Shown piece by piece: positions 325 through 8,673 of a stretch of 64,000 bases of DNA. Origin of the DNA: Pseudomonas aeruginosa PAO1. GTDB lineage: Bacteria; Pseudomonadota; Gammaproteobacteria; Pseudomonadales; Pseudomonadaceae. A program made the translations under genes and the position numbers. The stretch is taken from assembly GCF_000006765.1 (NCBI RefSeq), contig NC_002516.2, one strand, 5' to 3'. The notes under the pieces are model-generated. The model was given only the letters and a program-made list of their open reading frames with translations. It searched no databases and had not been told where the DNA came from. Position 1 is the stretch's first letter; each line of letters starts with the position of its first letter.

Positions 325-583
325 GGCGGTCTCCGGGCGAGCGCTGCGGGGAAGGGGAAAGGCGGATGCCACCGATGCGATGGGTGAGCATGGAGAGTCC
401 TCGTCGGCTATTGGAATTGTTATGGCCGCTTCCGGGACGAGCGAAAGCGTGGCAGACGCAGGTTAGGCGGATTACCTATCAGGATGAATTCATATTCGAT
501 TGGGCTGGCATCAGGAAAACCTGATGTATGGCCAGGCCCCGAGAAGGCCGGCTCCTGCGAAGGGAGCCGGCCGGTCGCGGCAG

Positions 584-2500
584 TTACTTCAGGTCCTCGC
601 GCGGCGGTTTGCCGGGCTGGCTGGCGTAGTCCGGCAGGGCGCTGATCGCCTGTTCCTTGTCGGGGATGCTGGACGGGTCGAGGTCGCCGCCGACGTTGCG
701 CGGGTCGGTGGGGATCGCCGAGGGAATCACCACGGTGCGCTCGGCCAGCGGCCAGCCGAGAATGGTCTCCAGGCGCCCGCCTTCCTCCTCGGGGCCGGTG
801 ATGGCGTCCAGGCGCAGCGGCAGCGGATGGCCGATCAGCCGTTCGACCTCGCCCGCCGCCTCCGGCGCGGCCAGGGTCAGGCCGGTGCGGTAGAAGCCCG
901 GCAGACTCGAGCGCGGCACATAGACCCGCAGCAGGGCACCGTTGCGGATCCGGCCGCGCGCGTCGGGTTCCTGGTCCTGGGCGTAGCCGTAGGCCAGCGC
1001 CGGATCGCCGGCGATATAGAAACCGCGCCAGATCGCGTCGAGGTCCTGGCTGCGCGCGCGCACCCCGCCGAAGACGATGCTTTGCGCCGCTTCGAGGAAG
1101 GTGCCGTGGTAGCCGACGAACACATAGCCGCGCTCCTCCAGTTGGCGGTGCGCCTGGAGCAGCCGCTCCACCGTCCAGTTCTGCGTGCCGCGGGTGCTGA
1201 AGCTGATGTCGCCGCCGTCGCCGAGGAACTCCGCGCCAGTGGGATAGTTGCGCTCCAGCAGGGCGTCGCCGCTGTCCGCCGGGCCCGCGCATTCACCGGC
1301 GGCGACCGGGCAGGTCAGGCTCACCACGTCGGCGCTGGCCGCGCCGGCCTCGTCGTTGCCTGTGCCCTGCCGGACGAAGCGCTCGCTCTCGGCGGCGGCC
1401 AGGGTCAGGGCCAGACGGGCCTGCTCCGGCTGCTCGCGGATCGCTTCGCCCAGGTCGCCGCCGCTGCCGGGGCTGGCCAGGGCGTTGCGGATCACCTGGT
1501 CGACCTGGTTCCACGACAGCCGCGCCGCCAGGTAGAGGGCGACCAGCCGCTGCACCGGATAGCCGCACTGCTCCAGTTGTTCCCAGCCGCGCGGCTGGCG
1601 ATGACGGGTGAAGGTCTCCAGCGGCAGGTGGCAGGCCTGGTGCGCGGTCAGCGCGGCCAGGCTGCCGCCCTCGGGGAAATGCAGGCGATGACTGATGACC
1701 GTGGGCTTGATGTCCAGGTCATGCTTCGCCGGGTTGCCGGCGAGCACCCGGTAGATCTTGCCTTCCCAGGTATCGTCGAGGTTGCAGCGCTGCTGGGCGA
1801 GGTAGTTGTAGACCCCGTCCAGCGGGTCGAGCAGGCACAACACCTTGCCGCTGGCCCATTCGCTCCAGCGCTTTTCCCGGCGCGGCTGGGCCTGGGCCAT
1901 GACCACGCTGACCCCGGCATGGCTGATGGCGAGCGTCGGCTGCATCTCGTTGCTCTCGTGCGCCCTGACGAAGAAGGTGGCATCGCGCGCCAGCTTCGCC
2001 AGCAACTCGTCGCCCATCTCGATGGTGTAGATCGGCGACATGTGGCTGAGCTGGTTACCGGCGTTCAGTTCGTGGATGAACACCTTGATGTTCGAAGGCT
2101 TCTCGTGGCCGATCGGCACCAGCCAGTTCAGCGACCAACTGCCGCGCGCCTGGCGCGTGTAGCTGTAGCGCACCGGCTTGTTCGGCTCGACGCCACCTTC
2201 GAGGCGGATGGTCAGGCCGTCGCTGGTGATGCTGAGGGCGTTGTCGATGGCCAGCTTGAGCGCGTCGTTGCCGCCCTCCAGGACCATGGAGTAGTGCAGC
2301 ACGCCCTGGCCGTTGGTGTCGGCGATGGCCGGGTCGACGCTCATGCGGCTGGAACGCACGCCGTCCTTGAGGTCGAGCACGCAGGCCTTGGCGCATTCGT
2401 TCCAGAGGTCGAAGGCTTCCTCGGCGGCGGACGCGAACGAGCCGCCGGCGAGCAGGCCGAGGCTGGCGACCAGGGGGATCCAATGGGGTGTCAGGTGCAT
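584..2500 (-). CDS. toxA: Exotoxin A precursor (EF-2 ADP-ribosyltransferase)
   Basis: 638 aa; signal peptide then AEEAFDLWNEC; furin site RHRQPR; YHGT motif; C-terminal REDLK. Confidence 0.99.
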   Translation of the reverse strand: MHLTPHWIPLVASLGLLAGGSFASAAEEAFDLWNECAKACVLDLKDGVRSSRMSVDPAIADTNGQGVLHYSMVLEGGNDALKLAIDNALSITSDGLTIRLEGGVEPNKPVRYSYTRQARGSWSLNWLVPIGHEKPSNIKVFIHELNAGNQLSHMSPIYTIEMGDELLAKLARDATFFVRAHESNEMQPTLAISHAGVSVVMAQAQPRREKRWSEWASGKVLCLLDPLDGVYNYLAQQRCNLDDTWEGKIYRVLAGNPAKHDLDIKPTVISHRLHFPEGGSLAALTAHQACHLPLETFTRHRQPRGWEQLEQCGYPVQRLVALYLAARLSWNQVDQVIRNALASPGSGGDLGEAIREQPEQARLALTLAAAESERFVRQGTGNDEAGAASADVVSLTCPVAAGECAGPADSGDALLERNYPTGAEFLGDGGDISFSTRGTQNWTVERLLQAHRQLEERGYVFVGYHGTFLEAAQSIVFGGVRARSQDLDAIWRGFYIAGDPALAYGYAQDQEPDARGRIRNGALLRVYVPRSSLPGFYRTGLTLAAPEAAGEVERLIGHPLPLRLDAITGPEEEGGRLETILGWPLAERTVVIPSAIPTDPRNVGGDLDPSSIPDKEQAISALPDYASQPGKPPREDLK

Positions 2501-2749
2501 CGCGATGGCTCCTTTGATGGGTGAAGGATGAGGCTGATCGAGCGGTTGGTTTTTCTTGTCGGGCGAGCCGGCGGAGAGCGGCGGGGCGTCTAGGGTGCGG
2601 GTTGCGGGGAGGCTGGCGGGGAGCGGAAGAGAGCTTTTATGGGATTTATGAACTGGATTGCAGAGTGGTGAATGTGCGAACGGGAGGCTTGCCGATCGGA
2701 GGATACATGCAGGGCGTCCATCTCGGCCTGGTGGTGGCAGCCCGGCCTG

Positions 2750-3118
2750 TCAGTCAGGCGCCTGACAACCCAGGGTGACGACCAGTTCGCGGCCGCTCGC
2801 CAAGCCGGCGTCCGCCGCCAGGGTCAGCGTGCGCGGCGTGTCCTGGCGACTATCGAGCAGCCCCTCTTGAAGCACGAGGCTGTCGGCGCTGGCGCCCCTG
2901 GCCAGCAGCCGATATCGCACCAGCGCCGAGGTACAGCCGCATTCGCCGGTGGAGCGCCGGGCCTCAAGGGTGAGTGGCAGGTGCAACTGGCCCTCCGCCG
3001 TGTGCGGTGCACCGAGCCGGGCGGCGAGGCAGGCGGAGAGAGCATTGTCGAGCGTCGCCGCGTCGGCGAATGGGGCGGCCAGGCAGAGGCTGCCGAGGAG
3101 CAGGGCTTTGGCGTCCAT
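2750..3118 (-). CDS. Small exported Cys-containing hypothetical protein
   Basis: 122 aa; signal-peptide-like N-terminus (MDAKALLLGSLCLAAPFADA), CGC motif and C-terminal LGCQAPD. Confidence 0.7.
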   Translation of the reverse strand: MDAKALLLGSLCLAAPFADAATLDNALSACLAARLGAPHTAEGQLHLPLTLEARRSTGECGCTSALVRYRLLARGASADSLVLQEGLLDSRQDTPRTLTLAADAGLASGRELVVTLGCQAPD

Positions 3119-3478
3119 GTCGGGGTTCCGCTGGGGATGGAAAGGGCATCATGGCTGAGGTGGCTTTATTCGTCGAACAATGGCTGGCCCTGCCGGTATA
3201 TCGGCCAGGACTTCAAGCGTTGCGGAAACGGCCTGACCAGCTGCAGCGGCTTGCAATCAAAAACGCTGGGCTCGCAATCAGCGTGGCTTTGTCCGGAAGC
3301 TCGCGAAGGGGCGGCATGGATGAATTTTGAAAGTGGGAGTTCGTTAATGAACCGAAGGTATGCGGCTTCCGTGACTGGCCGGGGTAGATGAGGTGTGCGT
3401 TAAGGAAATGACCGTTTGACGCAGGCGCGATTATAAGAGGCGAGAGAGCGCACCTTCTGGATCATCTAAACACGGGAT

Positions 3479-3529
3479 ATTGAAGTTGATTGCAGTGTAT
3501 TGCCGATGCATTGGGGCTTATTGACTGGG
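3479..3529 (+). promoter_or_regulatory. Pyocin P-box (PrtN-responsive repeats)
   Basis: ATTG at 3479, 3489, 3499, 3510 and 3520 (10-11 bp period) upstream of the pyocin gene; fits the ATTGnn(n)GT P-box repeat. Confidence 0.8.
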
Positions 3530-3593
3530 AGAGGGTTCTCTAGGTGGGAGTCGCTCAATACATTACACTTTCAAATTAATGTAGGGGCGATCT

Positions 3594-5663
3594 ATGGCTG
3601 TCAATGATTACGAACCTGGTTCGATGGTTATTACACATGTGCAGGGTGGTGGGCGTGACATAATCCAGTATATTCCTGCTCGATCAAGCTACGGTACTCC
3701 ACCATTTGTCCCACCAGGACCAAGTCCGTATGTCGGTACTGGAATGCAGGAGTACAGGAAGCTAAGAAGTACGCTTGATAAGTCCCATTCAGAACTCAAG
3801 AAAAACCTGAAAAATGAAACCCTGAAGGAGGTTGATGAACTCAAGAGTGAAGCGGGGTTGCCAGGTAAAGCGGTCAGTGCCAATGACATCCGCGATGAAA
3901 AGAGTATCGTTGATGCACTCATGGATGCCAAAGCAAAATCGCTAAAGGCCATTGAGGATCGCCCGGCCAATCTTTATACGGCTTCAGACTTTCCTCAGAA
4001 GTCAGAGTCGATGTACCAGAGTCAGTTGCTGGCCAGCCGAAAATTCTATGGAGAGTTCCTGGATCGCCATATGAGTGAGCTGGCCAAAGCGTACAGCGCC
4101 GATATCTATAAGGCGCAAATCGCTATCTTGAAACAAACGTCTCAAGAGCTGGAGAATAAAGCCCGGTCATTGGAAGCAGAAGCCCAGCGAGCCGCTGCTG
4201 AGGTGGAGGCGGACTACAAGGCCAGGAAGGCAAATGTCGAGAAAAAAGTGCAGTCCGAGCTTGACCAGGCTGGGAATGCTTTGCCTCAACTGACCAATCC
4301 AACGCCAGAGCAGTGGCTTGAACGCGCTACTCAACTGGTTACGCAGGCGATCGCCAATAAGAAGAAATTGCAGACTGCAAACAATGCCTTGATTGCCAAG
4401 GCACCCAATGCACTGGAGAAACAAAAGGCAACCTACAACGCCGATCTCCTAGTGGATGAAATCGCCAGCCTGCAAGCACGGCTGGACAAGCTGAACGCCG
4501 AAACGGCAAGGCGCAAGGAAATCGCTCGTCAAGCGGCGATCAGGGCTGCCAATACTTATGCCATGCCAGCCAATGGCAGCGTTGTCGCCACCGCCGCAGG
4601 CCGGGGTCTGATCCAGGTCGCACAAGGCGCCGCATCCCTTGCTCAAGCGATCTCCGATGCGATTGCCGTCCTGGGCCGGGTCCTGGCTTCAGCACCCTCG
4701 GTGATGGCCGTGGGCTTTGCCAGTCTGACCTACTCCTCCCGGACTGCCGAGCAATGGCAGGACCAAACGCCCGATAGCGTTCGTTACGCCCTGGGCATGG
4801 ATGCCGCTAAATTGGGGCTTCCCCCAAGCGTAAACCTGAACGCGGTTGCAAAAGCCAGCGGTACCGTCGATCTGCCGATGCGCCTGACCAACGAGGCACG
4901 AGGCAACACGACGACCCTTTCGGTGGTCAGCACCGATGGTGTGAGCGTTCCGAAAGCCGTTCCGGTCCGGATGGCGGCCTACAATGCCACGACAGGCCTG
5001 TACGAGGTTACGGTTCCCTCTACGACCGCAGAAGCGCCGCCACTGATCCTGACCTGGACGCCGGCGAGTCCTCCAGGAAACCAGAACCCTTCGAGTACCA
5101 CTCCGGTCGTACCGAAGCCGGTGCCGGTATATGAGGGAGCGACCCTTACACCGGTGAAGGCTACCCCGGAAACCTATCCTGGGGTGATTACACTACCGGA
5201 AGACCTGATCATCGGCTTCCCGGCCGACTCGGGGATCAAGCCGATCTATGTGATGTTCAGGGATCCGCGGGATGTACCTGGTGCTGCGACTGGCAAGGGA
5301 CAGCCCGTCAGCGGTAATTGGCTCGGCGCCGCCTCTCAAGGTGAGGGGGCTCCAATTCCAAGCCAGATTGCGGATAAACTACGTGGTAAGACATTCAAAA
5401 ACTGGCGGGACTTTCGGGAACAATTCTGGATAGCTGTGGCTAATGATCCTGAGTTAAGTAAACAGTTTAATCCTGGTAGTTTAGCTGTAATGAGAGATGG
5501 AGGGGCTCCTTATGTCAGAGAGTCAGAACAGGCTGGCGGGAGAATAAAGATCGAAATCCACCACAAGGTTCGAATAGCAGATGGAGGCGGCGTTTACAAT
5601 ATGGGGAACCTTGTTGCAGTAACGCCAAAACGTCATATAGAAATCCACAAGGGAGGGAAGTGA
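3594..5663 (+). CDS. pys2: Pyocin S2 killing protein (HNH DNase)
   Basis: 689 aa; pyocin S domain ending PIYVMFRDPR; C-terminal HNH motif EIHHKV...GNL...HIEIH. Confidence 0.97.
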   Translation: MAVNDYEPGSMVITHVQGGGRDIIQYIPARSSYGTPPFVPPGPSPYVGTGMQEYRKLRSTLDKSHSELKKNLKNETLKEVDELKSEAGLPGKAVSANDIRDEKSIVDALMDAKAKSLKAIEDRPANLYTASDFPQKSESMYQSQLLASRKFYGEFLDRHMSELAKAYSADIYKAQIAILKQTSQELENKARSLEAEAQRAAAEVEADYKARKANVEKKVQSELDQAGNALPQLTNPTPEQWLERATQLVTQAIANKKKLQTANNALIAKAPNALEKQKATYNADLLVDEIASLQARLDKLNAETARRKEIARQAAIRAANTYAMPANGSVVATAAGRGLIQVAQGAASLAQAISDAIAVLGRVLASAPSVMAVGFASLTYSSRTAEQWQDQTPDSVRYALGMDAAKLGLPPSVNLNAVAKASGTVDLPMRLTNEARGNTTTLSVVSTDGVSVPKAVPVRMAAYNATTGLYEVTVPSTTAEAPPLILTWTPASPPGNQNPSSTTPVVPKPVPVYEGATLTPVKATPETYPGVITLPEDLIIGFPADSGIKPIYVMFRDPRDVPGAATGKGQPVSGNWLGAASQGEGAPIPSQIADKLRGKTFKNWRDFREQFWIAVANDPELSKQFNPGSLAVMRDGGAPYVRESEQAGGRIKIEIHHKVRIADGGGVYNMGNLVAVTPKRHIEIHKGGK

Positions 5664-5664
5664 T

Positions 5665-5928
5665 ATGAAGTCCAAGATTTCCGAATATACGGAAAAAGAG
5701 TTTCTTGAGTTTGTTAAAGACATATACACAAACAATAAGAAAAAGTTCCCTACCGAGGAGTCTCATATTCAAGCCGTGCTTGAATTTAAAAAACTAACGG
5801 AACACCCAAGCGGCTCAGACCTTCTTTACTACCCCAACGAAAATAGAGAAGATAGCCCAGCTGGAGTTGTAAAGGAAGTTAAAGAATGGCGTGCTTCCAA
5901 GGGGCTTCCTGGCTTTAAGGCCGGTTAG
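5665..5928 (+). CDS. imm2: Pyocin S2 immunity protein
   Basis: 87 aa colicin E DNase-immunity family (YTEKEFLEF...HPSGSDLLYYP...EWRASKGLPGFK), 1 bp after the toxin stop. Confidence 0.97.
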   Translation: MKSKISEYTEKEFLEFVKDIYTNNKKKFPTEESHIQAVLEFKKLTEHPSGSDLLYYPNENREDSPAGVVKEVKEWRASKGLPGFKAG

Positions 5929-5937
5929 TTGGCCATC

Positions 5938-5965
5938 AACAAGCCCCGTTTCGACGGGGCTTGTT
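5938..5965 (+). terminator. Hairpin downstream of imm2
   Basis: AACAAGCCCCGT-TTCG-ACGGGGCTTGTT, a 12-bp perfect stem with a UUCG loop. Confidence 0.75.
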
Positions 5966-6026
5966 CCATGTTGACGCTGCTCTATCTTGACAGTCTGTCC
6001 TGAATATTCTTGAAGACAATCACATT

Positions 6027-6286
6027 ATGAGCCGCAACCACCGCAAAACACCCATCGTCGGGCGCACGAGCTGCCGTAGCGAGCTCTCCACGTTGGCCAG
6101 CAGCCCACCTCTCCCTACTGGAAAGTCAGGTCAATAACACTGGTGCCACGTAAGGATGGGCGTTCCTACTGGCCCCTCATACGCCAGGCTGCTACGGCAG
6201 ATCGTGTCGCTAACCTCAAGGGACACAACCCGCAAGAACGCGCGTCCCTGAAAAAGCGCCTGCTGCGCAAGTGGATGAGCAAATGA
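6027..6286 (+). pseudogene. Degenerate small hypothetical gene (MSRNHRKTPIVG...[10 protein letters not shown])
   Basis: Recognisable N- and C-terminal segments lie in different frames with stops between them; the final TGA overlaps the next ATG (ATGA). Confidence 0.6.
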
Positions 6287-6638
6287 GTACATCCAACATC
6301 CAGGCATTGGCCAGCACTGGGCACAGCTCGCCAAAGAAGCGGGATTCCGAGCCGACTATGACAGCACATCAACGCCAGAAACACATCTGGTCTGCGGAGT
6401 AACCCAAGAGTGGATTCGAGAACACATCGTTGCCACCAACGATATGCGCCCGTTCGGCCTGCTGCATTTGCTGGGTCAGGCATCGTTGCGCATGGAGCAA
6501 GCGTTGTGGCCGGAAGATTACGAGCGGATGACTCGTAAGGTCAAGGGAGTCCAGCGGGAAGCTGAAGGCGACAACGCCAAATCATACATTTATGAAGAAG
6601 TCATGCAGATAAGGCAGGAGCGCTTCGATAAAGCACGA
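6283..6638 (+). pseudogene. Frameshifted hypothetical gene, possibly antitoxin-like; its 3' half is the start of ORF 6444..6788
   Basis: ATG 6283 reads [11 protein letters not shown], then a frameshift at ~6316-6318 gives [15 protein letters not shown]...[32 protein letters not shown]...QERFDKAR. Confidence 0.55.
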
Positions 6639-6804
6639 CATAATTTGCAAGGGGTTTGTCATAGGTATCAAGGATCCAATTATTTTACAGTCCTGATACT
6701 AGTATTGTGGTTGTTCTCAAAGAGGATGGAATGTTTTTGTCAGGGTGGTATCTTGAGCCAGGAAGCAGACAGGAAAAAACTATTTTGAGAATGAGGTGAT
6801 TTAA
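6639..6804 (+). pseudogene. Colicin D-like tRNase C-terminal remnant (two 1-nt deletions)
   Basis: Reconstructed GS(K)LFYSPDTSIVVVLKEDGMFLSGWYLEPGSRQEK(N)YFENEVI*, versus colicin D GSKVYFNPNTMNVVIIKSNGEFLSGW (recalled). TAA 6802-6804 abuts the immunity ATG at 6805. Confidence 0.75.
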
Positions 6805-7077
6805 ATGAGCATGGCACTTATTGATCTTGCAAGAGATTTTTTGGATGGATCGTTAAGCGGAAAGAGTTTCACAAAAAAATTCTTTGAAATGTGGCGTAGC
6901 GAAGGTGCGTCAGGCTTGCTGAAAAAGGATGATGATAATCTTGGCGCTTGCCTCAGGCTTATGTTTGGAATGGCAGATTGCTTCACGGATGGACCGAAGG
7001 ATAATGATGGTGAGATAAATGAAGAGGAGCTAAAGCAGGAAGTTAGAGGGCTTTTGAAGAAATATAAATATATCTAG
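6805..7077 (+). CDS. Orphan colicin D-type immunity protein
   Basis: 90 aa; MALIDLARDFL...MADCF...EINEEELKQEVRGLLKKY resembles ImmD; GAGGTG RBS upstream. Confidence 0.85.
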   Translation: MSMALIDLARDFLDGSLSGKSFTKKFFEMWRSEGASGLLKKDDDNLGACLRLMFGMADCFTDGPKDNDGEINEEELKQEVRGLLKKYKYI

Positions 7078-7108
7078 CTGATGATCCTTTATATCCGAAG
7101 ATATAGAT

Positions 7109-7144
7109 CAGGCGAAGTCAGTTTATGGGCTTCGCCTGTTTCTT
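7109..7144 (+). terminator. Putative intrinsic terminator
   Basis: CAGGCGAAG...CTTCGCCTG stem followed by TTTCTT. Confidence 0.6.
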
Positions 7145-7246
7145 AGCCAATCCATGCTTCGAGAGCAGATGTAAATCGCCGAATTGTCAGTTAGTGCGTC
7201 AGTCGCAAAATGCGTGAGTCTGCGATTTTGAATTGAAAGCCTTGTG

Positions 7247-7496
7247 TATTACTATCCTGCTCCGGCAACACTACCTGCCTTCCCCGACGCCTTGAGAGCT
7301 AAGCCAAAAACTTCTATTCAAGGTGGTGGTGGGTTGCGGAAGCACTGGAAGGATAAAAGGGAATATCTATAAATGGGATTCTCAGCATGGCAGTTTTGAG
7401 ATGTATGACAAGAGAGGGTGGCACTTGGGAGGGTTTGATTCTAATGCTGGTGCTCGCACGAAGTCTGCTGATCCAAAAAGGAGTGTAGAAGCATGA
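7247..7496 (+). pseudogene. Colicin E3 / pyocin S6-like rRNase domain remnant (frameshift at 7355-7358)
   Basis: YYPAPATLPAFPDALRAKPKTSIQGGGGLRKHWKDK / GNIYKWDSQHGSFEMYDKRGWHLGGFDSNAGARTKSADPKRSVEA*; the WDSQHG..E motif is retained; its stop overlaps the next ATG. Confidence 0.88.
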
Positions 7497-7726
7497 CTGT
7501 ATTGATTTCTGGGTACCTACCATCGGGAAATGATGAGTCCTTGAAATATGAAAAAACTGTTCCTTTCGAATATATTTCGAAAGTTATGGAGGTGATGCGT
7601 TGGAAGAAGGGTGAGAATATTGAGGGTGAATATCCTATTAAGAATGATGATGTTGTAAGGATTGAGGAGGTTATAGGCGAAAAGCTTCCGGTTGGATTGG
7701 AGTATTTTATTGGGGTTTACGCCTAA
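7493..7726 (+). CDS. Orphan immunity protein, probable pyocin S6 (rRNase) type
   Basis: 77 aa acidic, low-GC ORF coupled by an ATGA overlap to the rRNase remnant. Confidence 0.8.
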   Translation: MTVLISGYLPSGNDESLKYEKTVPFEYISKVMEVMRWKKGENIEGEYPIKNDDVVRIEEVIGEKLPVGLEYFIGVYA

Positions 7727-7931
7727 CTATAGATTGTAGAGGAAGGTCCTGCTGCATGGGGGTTCTTTTTAAATTTAAAAATATTCTATTTGGCAATAGA
7801 GTGCTCTTCCTTGGCCTGATAGTTGTAAAGAAAGAGAGCGTTACTGGAAAAACCTAGATTTTTAATGGTCATGAGGGAAAAGATCACTCTGTTGCTTCAA
7901 GCCCTGACTCCTTTCAGGGCGTATGACGGGG

Positions 7932-8486
7932 TCAGGCCCGGATCAGCGGGCGTGGACTGTCGAGGAGTTGGGGGCAGTCGGAGAGGGGGATCCAGGTCTT
8001 GCCTTGCCAGTGCAGGGTGTCGATCTCGGCGGTTTTCCAGTGCAGCACGGCGCGCTGGGGCGTGGCGTTGGGGCGGGACTGGCTGCGCAGGCGTGGCAGC
8101 ACCGAGCCGCTGACCCAACGGCGCAAACCCCGTGCCGCGCCAGGCGCTGCGAGCCAGAGCAGAGCGTAGAGCCCGGACTCGCTGACCAGGCAGTCCTGGC
8201 GTGGCCCGTGGCGTTCGTCATGGAGCCAGGCGAGCCGCCACTGATCGGTGTCCAGATGCCGCTCCAGCGCATGGCAGAGGGCGAACAAGCGCTCGCGCTG
8301 TTCCGCCGTCGCCAGCGGCCACGGCGCCTCGTCACACAACGCCGCCGGCGCCCGACCGCCCAGGTAACGGCCCAGCAGCCGTACCAGGTCGGAGAGCACG
8401 AACCAGCCTTCCTCATCCAGCAGCACGGCGCGCAGGACCCGATGGTGGTGGGTGAAACGGCTGGGTTGGAGGAGGGTGTCAGACAT
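7932..8486 (-). CDS. BRO-N domain protein (phage antirepressor-like)
   Basis: MSDTLLQPSRF...LRAVLLDEEGWFVLSDL...LVSESGLYALL...LRRWVSGSVLPRL; start set at ATG 8486. Confidence 0.85.
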   Translation of the reverse strand: MSDTLLQPSRFTHHHRVLRAVLLDEEGWFVLSDLVRLLGRYLGGRAPAALCDEAPWPLATAEQRERLFALCHALERHLDTDQWRLAWLHDERHGPRQDCLVSESGLYALLWLAAPGAARGLRRWVSGSVLPRLRSQSRPNATPQRAVLHWKTAEIDTLHWQGKTWIPLSDCPQLLDSPRPLIRA

Positions 8487-8673
8487 GGCGCACCTCCGGG
8501 GAGGTGGTGTTGGTGTCGTGCCGCGAGGGGATGAATGGGGTGGGTTGAAAAACGAATGGCATACGCATTTCCTCAATGGAATACACCGCTACTTTCGGGA
8601 ACGGTTTGCCGCTGGGTGGTATGCGTTCTTAGCGCCGAAGAATGATTATGGAGCGCACCGATAGCGGTCAACG

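What the first reader, a model, noticed from the sequence alone, without database searches (positions are those of the whole stretch)
6639..7077. Hidden colicin D-like tRNase tip fused into a spurious ORF, coupled to an ImmD-like gene
SEEN: with single-base deletions at ~6678-6679 and in the A-run 6774-6779, the sequence reads GS(K)LFYSPDTSIVVVLKEDGMFLSGWYLEPGSRQEK(N)YFENEVI-TAA, immediately followed by ATG 6805. KNOWN (recalled): colicin D ends GSKVYFNPNTMNVVIIKSNGEFLSGW..., and its catalytic His lies further upstream, a part absent here. INFERENCE: this is the relic of an SD-type pyocin, and the 90-aa protein may neutralise a particular SD-class pyocin. Standard ORF calling hides it inside ORF 6444..6788.
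Basis: partly seen in the sequence, partly recalled or inferred. Interest (0 to 1): 0.68.

Follow-up and report, generated by a model that had tools for sequence, protein, structure and literature searches.

The report
Pyocin tRNase relic plus orphan immunity
Just downstream of the pyocin S2 genes of Pseudomonas aeruginosa lie the broken last 52 codons of a colicin D-type (pyocin SD3-type) tRNA-cutting toxin gene and its still-intact immunity gene. The feature is real, but it is an 'orphan immunity' leftover of a kind already published for this locus.

Summary
Window 6648-6804 is the 3' end (52 codons plus stop) of a colicin D-type tRNase pyocin gene. It is spread over three reading frames because one base is missing after 6679 and one A is missing from the run 6774-6779. 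Read with X at the two breaks, 44 of 53 positions match an intact 740/743-aa pyocin SD3-type gene found in a metagenome contig (L009) at the same chromosomal site. The stop TAA (6802-6804) abuts the ATG of a 90-aa gene (6805-7077). That gene is ImmD family by profile (PF09204, 54.9 bits) and by fold (TM 0.86-0.92 to colicin D immunity protein), and differs at 4 residues from L009's cognate immunity protein. The toxin's catalytic N-terminal half and everything upstream were replaced by a pyocin S2/ImS2 cassette that carries a remnant of transposon-type cargo genes. That remnant is fused to the relic as the spurious ORF 6444-6788. The orphan immunity gene was already reported for strain PAO1 (Dingemans 2016). 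The toxin relic and its assignment to the SD3 class rather than the SD2 class are small additions. Whether the orphan still protects is open, at roughly even odds. Published killing of PAO1 by SD2 tests a non-cognate toxin class.

The parts
3594..5663 (+). pyocin S2 gene (689 aa; Pyocin_S + HNH DNase domains). This is the incoming killer gene that now occupies the site.
   Evidence: Pfam PF06958 and PF21431. It is 99-100% identical to proteins named pyocin S2 of P. aeruginosa.
5665..5928 (+). ImS2, the cognate DNase immunity gene (87 aa)
   Evidence: Pfam PF01320, E 1.1e-36
5932..6638 (+). Degenerate remnant of two small cargo ORFs (108 and 123 aa in intact copies). On plasmids these ORFs follow a resolvase and, in one P. 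aeruginosa megaplasmid, an S-type pyocin/immunity pair.
   Evidence: blastn hits 1564 plasmid records at 75-79% identity. Annotated loci L010 and L011. The 123-aa protein is 71% identical to the frame-0 translation of 6279-6650. Homology ends at about 6638.
6444..6788 (+). Spurious chimeric ORF (114 aa; the PA1152-type call). It joins the C-terminal part of the cargo ORF, the first 11 relic codons in frame, and then an out-of-frame reading of the relic.
   Evidence: ORF list, three-frame translation, comparison with the plasmid homologue. No Pfam family.
6648..6804 (+). 3' relic of an SD3/S12-type colicin D-family tRNase pyocin gene: 52 codons plus TAA. It is broken by a missing base after 6679 and a missing A in the run 6774-6779.
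   Evidence: PDB colicin D hits. tblastn with natural pyocins. DNA and codon alignment with the intact L009 gene gives 13 substitutions and 2 one-base gaps, with 44 of 53 positions identical.
6793..6799 (+). Shine-Dalgarno-like GAGGTGA inside the relic; its GAGG core ends 8 bases before the immunity ATG
   Evidence: Read directly from the sequence. The same motif lies before the cognate gene in L009. Its function is inferred.
6805..7077 (+). Intact orphan immunity gene (90 aa), ImmD / Colicin_immun family, ImSD3 type
   Evidence: PF09204 54.9 bits against a cut-off of 22. Colicin D immunity protein in PDB, full length, E 1e-3. Predicted four-helix fold matches 1tfk_B and 1v74_B, TM 0.86-0.92. 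4 of 90 residues differ from the L009 cognate. Complex model 0.92 against best control 0.01.
7109..7138 (+). Terminator-like hairpin (11 pairs) followed by TTTCTT, 32 bases after the immunity stop
   Evidence: Consensus scan. The number of such sites in the region is not above chance, so this is a position-based inference.
7244..7726 (+). Neighbouring second orphan module: a broken colicin E3-type (pyocin S6-type) rRNase relic (7244-7496) and its 77-aa immunity gene (7493-7726)
   Evidence: Pfam PF09000 'Cytotoxic', E 7.5e-16, on 7323-7496. Described and tested for PAO1 in PMC4905994.

Best explanation
This is an orphan toxin-immunity remnant in the pyocin hot spot between toxA and PA1153 of Pseudomonas aeruginosa. 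An ancestor carried an SD3/S12-type S-pyocin here, with a colicin D-family tRNase killing domain and its ImmD-family immunity gene. That arrangement is still intact at the same site in the L009 contig. A cassette made of pyocin S2, ImS2 and two transposon-type cargo ORFs then replaced everything up to the last 52 codons of the old toxin gene. The junction lies at 6639-6648. The remaining toxin tip lacks the catalytic K608/H611 part, cannot kill, and has since lost two single bases. [quoted passage not shown] The identity and history of the parts are shown. It is inferred, at about even odds, that the 90-aa protein is still made. Transcription could come by read-through from the S2 operon or from a promoter in the relic, since no terminator-like site lies between 5928 and 6805. 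If made, the protein would sit on the active-site face of incoming SD3-class tRNase domains, as ImmD does on colicin D, and so protect the cell from pyocins of that toxin class only.
For: Relic identity. Loss of the catalytic part: the relic equals the last 52 of about 104 domain residues, while the critical residues K608, H611, S677 and W679 are named in PMC4964976 and LSGW aligns to the colicin D motif. Same site: L009 shares both flanks with the window, 2808-3417 at 91% and 7881-8509 at 98%. Incoming cassette. Immunity family. Signs of maintenance: the 273-nt gene has no indel although it holds runs of 7 A, 6 T and 5 A, whereas the 157-nt relic has two indels (rough Poisson P = 0.03). Divergence from L009 is 4.8% in the gene against 8.3% in the relic and about 10% in the downstream spacer, and dN/dS is 0.17. 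Only 1 of the 4 residue differences (position 67) falls in the predicted interface. The complex model scores 0.92 against a best control of 0.01; that mark was reached by 51 of 78 solved complexes and 2 of 108 mismatched pairs, the runs agree in at least 98% of contacts, and partner pLDDT is at least 92. Contigs from four RNA-seq libraries of four studies span the relic and the gene. The neighbouring S6-type orphan of PAO1 protects experimentally (PMC4905994).
Against: No protection has been shown. PAO1, which carries this orphan, is killed by pyocin SD2 (PMC4964976), and PMC13712311 removed the S12 orphan family from its analysis as failing to protect. Twelve of the 15 protein clusters related to the orphan are truncated or frameshifted versions, so the gene decays in some lineages. 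The relic shows a similarly low dN/dS (0.26), so the low ratio in the immunity gene may predate the truncation. The window's own allele has a derived non-synonymous change (D11), and G001 has a change in the Shine-Dalgarno core at 6796. RNA-library contigs show presence only, not level or strand. The promoter-like site in the relic is not above chance. A colicin D-ImmD complex is solved, so the complex model may pass from memory and does not tell which family member binds.
Confidence: 0.8

Rival explanations
1. The orphan gene is a silent or useless leftover. It is intact in this strain only because too little time has passed, it gives no protection against any pyocin, and it is on its way to decay like the relic.
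For: Many truncated or frameshifted alleles occur in other strains. PAO1 is killed by SD2. PMC13712311 treats the family as non-protective. The AT-rich DNA (GC 0.38-0.41 against 0.65 for the window) is of the kind that xenogeneic silencers bind (inference). The relic has a dN/dS as low as the gene. The Shine-Dalgarno core is changed in G001.
Against: The published killing test used SD2. Its toxin domain is only 66/104 identical to the SD3 class and differs at 11 of 24 predicted interface residues, so it is not a test of the cognate pair. There is no indel in 273 nt with three homopolymer runs, against two in the adjacent 157 nt. The intact form is the largest cluster, with 208 member sequences. 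The gene is less diverged than its flanks.
Confidence: 0.42
2. ORF 6444..6788 (the PA1152-type call) is a real protein-coding gene and the toxin-like reading is incidental.
For: It is the longest ORF there. Its first two thirds are 71% identical to a protein conserved on many plasmids.
Against: It starts at an internal Met of that homologue, and the frame has a stop at 6276-6278 where the homologue's N-terminus should be. The upstream partner ORF of the pair is broken over several frames. Its last third is an out-of-frame reading of DNA that matches a toxin gene at 92% in another frame. It has no Pfam family.
Confidence: 0.04
3. The frameshifts are assembly errors and the toxin tip is read in one frame in the living cell.
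For: One break lies in a homopolymer run, a typical error site.
Against: Both breaks are identical in G001, four metagenome contigs and contigs of four RNA-seq runs. Even in one frame the piece would lack the first half of the domain and the whole delivery part.
Confidence: 0.01

Closest known systems
Pyocin SD3 (also called S12) with its immunity protein ImSD3, described from strain PA7 (McCaughey et al. 2016, PMC4964976)
   Same: The relic matches the last 52 codons of this toxin class at 44 of 53 positions. The 90-aa protein has the same length and 96% identity to the immunity protein of an intact 740/743-aa SD3-type gene (L009), with the same stop-ATG abutment and the same chromosomal site.
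   Different: Here the receptor-binding part, the translocation part and the first half of the tRNase domain are gone, and the tip is frameshifted twice, so only the immunity gene is intact. I compared with L009, a metagenome contig, not with the PA7 record itself.
Orphan PF09204 immunity gene downstream of PA1152 in PAO1, ATCC 25324 and DK2 (Dingemans et al. 2016, PMC4905994)
   Same: Same gene, same position between the PA1152 and PA1153 homologues, same interpretation as an orphan tRNase immunity gene.
   Different: That paper reports a toxin remnant only for the S6-type module. In the text I read it does not mention the tRNase remnant upstream of this gene or say which tRNase class it belongs to. 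It did not test this gene.
S6-type orphan module of PAO1 (rRNase remnant of 250 nt plus immunity gene; PMC4905994)
   Same: Same architecture: a 3' toxin remnant carrying the ribosome-binding site, an intact immunity gene, and the same locus (window 7244-7726).
   Different: Different toxin family (colicin E3-type rRNase). Protection by that orphan was shown experimentally; for the tRNase orphan it was not.
Colicin D - ImmD of E. coli (PDB 1V74, 1TFO, 1TFK)
   Same: Same toxin and immunity families. The LSGW motif carrying the S677 and W679 equivalents is kept in the relic. The predicted immunity fold superposes at 1.5-1.7 A.
   Different: About 30% identity for the immunity protein. It is plasmid-borne with a different delivery part, and it is a complete, working pair.
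Orphan toxin-tip/immunity arrays downstream of cdiA and rhs genes
   Same: Old C-terminal toxin pieces with their immunity genes are displaced downstream by newer modules. Here the order is S2, then the SD3 relic, then the S6 relic.
   Different: Those systems are contact-dependent. Here the toxins are diffusible S-pyocins, and the last displacement involved a transposon-type cargo remnant.

Membership tests
Colicin D tRNase domain (Pfam PF11429), for the relic 6648-6804 | Significant sequence similarity to the domain | tested here: met
   Colicin D chains are the top PDB hits, E 1.1e-4. tblastn with natural pyocin tRNase domains: the linked set of HSPs has E 3e-16 in the window.
Colicin D tRNase domain (Pfam PF11429), for the relic 6648-6804 | Whole domain present and scoring over the family cut-off | tested here: not met
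   Only the last 52 of about 104 residues are present. A six-frame family scan of G001, which carries this relic apart from one substitution (6796), gave no match at E <= 0.01.
Colicin D tRNase domain (Pfam PF11429), for the relic 6648-6804 | Catalytic residues equivalent to colicin D K608 and H611 | tested here: not met
   These lie upstream of the point where homology starts at 6648. The residues are named in PMC4964976.
Colicin D tRNase domain (Pfam PF11429), for the relic 6648-6804 | Residues equivalent to S677 and W679 | tested here: met
   LSGW aligns with the colicin D motif in the PDB alignment.
Colicin D tRNase domain (Pfam PF11429), for the relic 6648-6804 | One uninterrupted reading frame | tested here: not met
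   Two one-base gaps relative to the intact L009 gene.
ImmD / Colicin_immun (Pfam PF09204), for the gene 6805-7077 | Profile match over the curated cut-off along the full length | tested here: met
   54.9 bits against a cut-off of 22; residues 1-86 on profile positions 1-87 of 88.
ImmD / Colicin_immun (Pfam PF09204), for the gene 6805-7077 | Four-helix fold of ImmD | tested here: met
   Model pLDDT 85.8 with four helices. Foldseek top hits 1tfk_B and 1v74_B, TM 0.86-0.92, rmsd 1.5-1.7 A; the next hit has E 1.6.
ImmD / Colicin_immun (Pfam PF09204), for the gene 6805-7077 | Gene lies directly after the 3' end of a colicin D-type toxin gene | tested here: met
   TAA at 6802-6804 and ATG at 6805. 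The intact L009 pair has the same layout.
ImmD / Colicin_immun (Pfam PF09204), for the gene 6805-7077 | Binds and blocks its cognate tRNase domain | tested here: inconclusive
   The complex model with the L009 tRNase domain scores 0.92 against a best control of 0.01. That mark was reached by 51 of 78 solved complexes and 2 of 108 mismatched pairs. It is a model only, and a like complex is solved.
ImmD / Colicin_immun (Pfam PF09204), for the gene 6805-7077 | Protects cells from the toxin | not testable with these tools
   Published data exist only for a non-cognate class: SD2 kills PAO1.
Orphan immunity module of S-type pyocins | Immunity gene without a complete cognate toxin gene, while the complete pair exists elsewhere | tested here: met
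   The window has only the 52-codon tip. The complete pair is in L009 at the syntenic site.

The most novel reading that the evidence does not exclude
The orphan is a working immunity gene specific for the SD3 class of tRNase pyocins. That toxin domain also occurs on other delivery parts in P. aeruginosa, in proteins of 397, 404, 444 and 591 aa. If so, the published view that this orphan family fails to protect rests on a test with the non-cognate SD2 class, and strain-against-strain predictions of pyocin sensitivity that drop this family would be wrong for SD3-class attackers.
Probability: 0.45. Interest if true: 0.35.

Novelty: already known. Interest (0 to 1): 0.2.

Why it matters
Orphan immunity genes decide which strains survive which pyocins. 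That matters for models of P. aeruginosa competition and for plans to use pyocins as narrow-spectrum antibacterials. This locus adds a clean, dated example of module displacement: three generations of killer modules in a row, the newest brought with transposon-type cargo. It also shows that the annotated hypothetical ORF upstream (PA1152 type) is a chimera of two gene remnants. The one point that could change practice is the class assignment. The orphan is of the SD3 type, so killing of PAO1 by SD2 does not show that it is useless.

Tried and rejected
1. The genome search on the window's own assembly failed because it is not held; I used the nearest genome, G001.
2. The PF11429 scan of 34 genomes of the genus found only a CdiA-like toxin in G016 and nothing in G001, because the relic is too short and broken for the family profile. 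This is not evidence against the relic.
3. Pfam on the 30-aa ORF 6707-6799 and on ORF 6444-6788 gave nothing useful.
I therefore could not see the genes next to the 86%, 63% and 59% relatives of the immunity protein (P0003, P0008, P0011), nor fetch an SD2 locus with ImSD2. The SD2 immunity protein was not compared.
5. The search of earlier findings never opened.
6. The one metagenome scan gave five loci, four of them the same orphan state and one intact.
7. RNA-seq evidence: only assembled contigs were available. They show presence in RNA libraries, not level, strand or ends. One run's contig stops at 7007 with a hole to 7370, which proves nothing.
8. Promoter and terminator scan: counts were not above shuffled controls. 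The promoter-like site at 6656-6683 is not conserved in the intact L009 gene, so I do not rely on it.
9. dN/dS as proof of selection on the orphan is rejected as decisive, because the dead relic shows a similar ratio.
10. The big profile search of protein representatives was not used, as the operators advised. The broken toxin tip was read only with X at its two breaks.

Full report
**Setting**

The window is Pseudomonas aeruginosa chromosome.
- ORF 3594-5663 is pyocin S2 (Pyocin_S plus HNH DNase domains; 99-100% identical to proteins named pyocin S2).
- ORF 5665-5928 is its immunity gene ImS2.
- The window's own assembly is not held. The nearest held genome, G001, is 99.4% identical over 5600-7800.

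**Checking the observation**

- Frame 0 runs up to 6679 (ending ...HRYQGSN).
- Frame 2 covers 6680-6778 and contains the LSGW motif.
- Frame 1 covers 6775-6804 (ending NEVI, then TAA).
- ATG follows immediately at 6805.

The 44-aa frame-2 piece on its own finds the four colicin D entries as the best hits in the PDB sequence set, with E 1.1e-4 to 7e-4 for 177,635 sequences.

I then collected natural P. aeruginosa pyocins carrying the Colicin_D domain, using the window's pyocin S2 as the query, and ran their C-termini against the whole window with tblastn. They fall into two toxin classes.
- The SD2 class matches 6677-6772 at 50-53% identity.
- The class found in the 740-aa SD3-length protein, and in proteins of 397, 404, 444 and 591 aa, matches 6677-6778 at 82% and 6775-6801 at 8 of 9 residues. 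BLAST's linked set of HSPs has E 3e-16.

**An intact copy at the same site**

A metagenome scan with the immunity protein returned five loci.
- Four carry the same state as the window.
- One, L009, carries an intact 743-aa ORF (740 aa from the first ATG) with Pyocin_S and Colicin_D domains, followed by a 90-aa PF09204 gene.

DNA alignment shows that homology between the window and L009 starts at 6648/6649 and runs to 7146 at 93% identity. There are two one-base gaps in the window, after 6679 and in the A-run 6774-6779, which has 6 A against 7 in L009. Read codon by codon in the L009 frame with X at the two breaks, 44 of 53 positions including the stop are identical.

L009 shares both flanks with the window: 2808-3417 at 91% and 7881-8509 at 98%. 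The SD3-type pair therefore occupies the same chromosomal hot spot.

**The breaks are real**

Both breaks are identical in G001, in four metagenome contigs, and in contigs from four RNA-seq runs of four studies.

**What cut the toxin gene**

Window 5932-6638 is 75-79% identical to a stretch found on 1564 plasmid records. In annotated examples it consists of two small hypothetical ORFs (108 and 123 aa) that follow a resolvase and a RelE/ParE-XRE pair. In a P. aeruginosa megaplasmid they follow a resolvase, a 772-aa S-type DNase pyocin and its immunity gene.

The 123-aa protein is 71% identical to the frame-0 translation of 6279-6650. That homology ends at about 6638, and the toxin homology starts at 6648. 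The junction therefore lies in 6639-6648.

ORF 6444-6788 is a chimera of three pieces:
- an internal-Met fragment of the cargo ORF;
- the first 11 relic codons, fused in frame;
- after the first break, an out-of-frame reading of the relic.

This agrees with the published remark that a Tn3-family remnant lies in the PAO1 S2 locus (PMC4905994).

Base composition fits a mosaic. GC is 0.38 in the relic, 0.41 in the immunity gene and 0.55 in the cargo remnant, against 0.65 for the window.

**The immunity gene**

The 90-aa product of 6805-7077 belongs to the ImmD family on three grounds:
- It matches PF09204 along its full length (54.9 bits, cut-off 22).
- It matches the colicin D immunity protein in the PDB (E 1e-3, residues 2-88).
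- Its AlphaFold model (pLDDT 85.8, four helices) finds only the two ImmD chains as significant structural matches (TM 0.86-0.92, rmsd 1.5-1.7 A).

It differs from the L009 cognate immunity protein at four residues: 11, 67, 82 and 88. A Shine-Dalgarno-like GAGGTGA lies inside the relic, its GAGG core ending 8 bases before the ATG. A terminator-like hairpin follows at 7109-7138.

**Does it still work?**

Points in favour:
- The 273-nt gene has no indel although it holds runs of 7 A, 6 T and 5 A. The adjacent 157-nt relic has two indels (rough Poisson P 0.03).
- The gene is less diverged from L009 (4.8%) than the relic (8.3%) or the downstream spacer (about 10%).
- A complex model of the window's protein with the L009 tRNase domain scored 0.92 against a best control of 0.01. 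That mark was reached by 51 of 78 solved complexes and 2 of 108 mismatched pairs. The runs agree in at least 98% of contacts, and partner pLDDT is at least 92. Only residue 67 of the four differences lies in the predicted interface.
- Contigs from RNA libraries span the gene.
- The neighbouring S6-type orphan of PAO1 protects experimentally (PMC4905994).

Points against:
- Twelve of the 15 related protein clusters are truncated or frameshifted forms.
- dN/dS is 0.17 for the gene but also 0.26 for the dead relic, so the low ratio may predate the truncation.
- The complex model may pass from memory of the solved colicin D-ImmD complex.
- PAO1 is killed by SD2 (PMC4964976), and a 2026 paper removed the 'S12' orphan family from its analysis as non-protective, citing that work (PMC13712311).

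On the last point, the SD2 toxin domain is only 66/104 identical to the SD3 class and differs at 11 of the 24 predicted interface residues. In the text I read, SD3 was not tested on PAO1. The published result therefore does not test the cognate pair. I put protection against SD3-class toxins at about even odds.

**Comparison with what is known**

The orphan PF09204 gene downstream of PA1152 in PAO1, ATCC 25324 and DK2 is already described (PMC4905994). So is the next module in the window, a pyocin S6-type rRNase remnant with its immunity gene (7244-7726).

Two things appear to be added here, relative to the papers held:
- the tRNase remnant itself, with its exact limits and breaks;
- the assignment of relic and orphan to the SD3 class, with an intact syntenic counterpart.

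No paper in the library combines SD3 with orphan immunity.

The order S2, then SD3 relic, then S6 relic resembles the displaced toxin-tip/immunity arrays of cdiA and rhs loci.

**Limits of this work**
- ImSD2 could not be fetched, so it was not compared.
- Only assembled RNA-seq contigs, not raw reads, were available.

**Verdict**

The feature is ordinary for this locus and in essence already published. The remaining question is a modest one: the orphan's specificity and activity.

Noticed in passing
window 7244-7726: A second orphan module lies right after the first. It is a broken colicin E3-type (pyocin S6-type) rRNase remnant in two frames (7244-7372 and 7323-7496; PF09000 E 7.5e-16) with a 77-aa immunity gene (7493-7726). 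It is absent from the syntenic L009 locus. It is known from PMC4905994.
   Followed up: partly
L011 (P. aeruginosa megaplasmid CP124675.1) 481-4790, against window 3275-6628: On a 480-kb plasmid, a resolvase gene is followed by a 772-aa S-type DNase pyocin, its immunity gene, and the same two small ORFs that lie degenerate after ImS2 in the window. The promoter-proximal stretch (window 3275-3419) is also shared. This suggests that S-pyocin cassettes travel as cargo of Tn3-type elements.
   Followed up: partly
window 6796 and 6835; L002 (G001): G001 has A instead of G at 6796, inside the GAGG core of the immunity gene's Shine-Dalgarno-like site. The window has G at 6835 (Asp11), whereas G001, five metagenome loci and the cognate L009 gene have A (Asn11). 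The window's allele therefore carries a derived amino-acid change.
   Followed up: no
proteins P0002, P0004-P0007, P0009-P0015: Many relatives of the orphan protein in other P. aeruginosa assemblies are N- or C-terminally truncated or frameshifted. One 53-aa form is seen on 33 contigs. The orphan is decaying in some lineages.
   Followed up: partly
L001 (G016) 411-2704 and L003 (G026) 1489-2431: In another species of the genus, a large toxin with a C-terminal Colicin_D domain (CdiA-like, open at the contig end) is followed by an ImmD-like 90-aa gene and a 126-aa gene. A third species has an ImmD-like gene and the same 126-aa gene with no Colicin_D domain in the genome. That looks like another orphan array.
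   Followed up: no
window 6299: The window has one extra T relative to G001 inside the degenerate cargo remnant, so this remnant is still accumulating indels between strains.
   Followed up: no
window 7008-7370 in RNA-seq run X22: In one RNA library the contig that covers pyocin S2 through the orphan gene stops at 7007, and the next contig starts at 7371, around the terminator-like hairpin. Contigs cannot show transcript ends, so this is only a hint of a transcript boundary.
   Followed up: no
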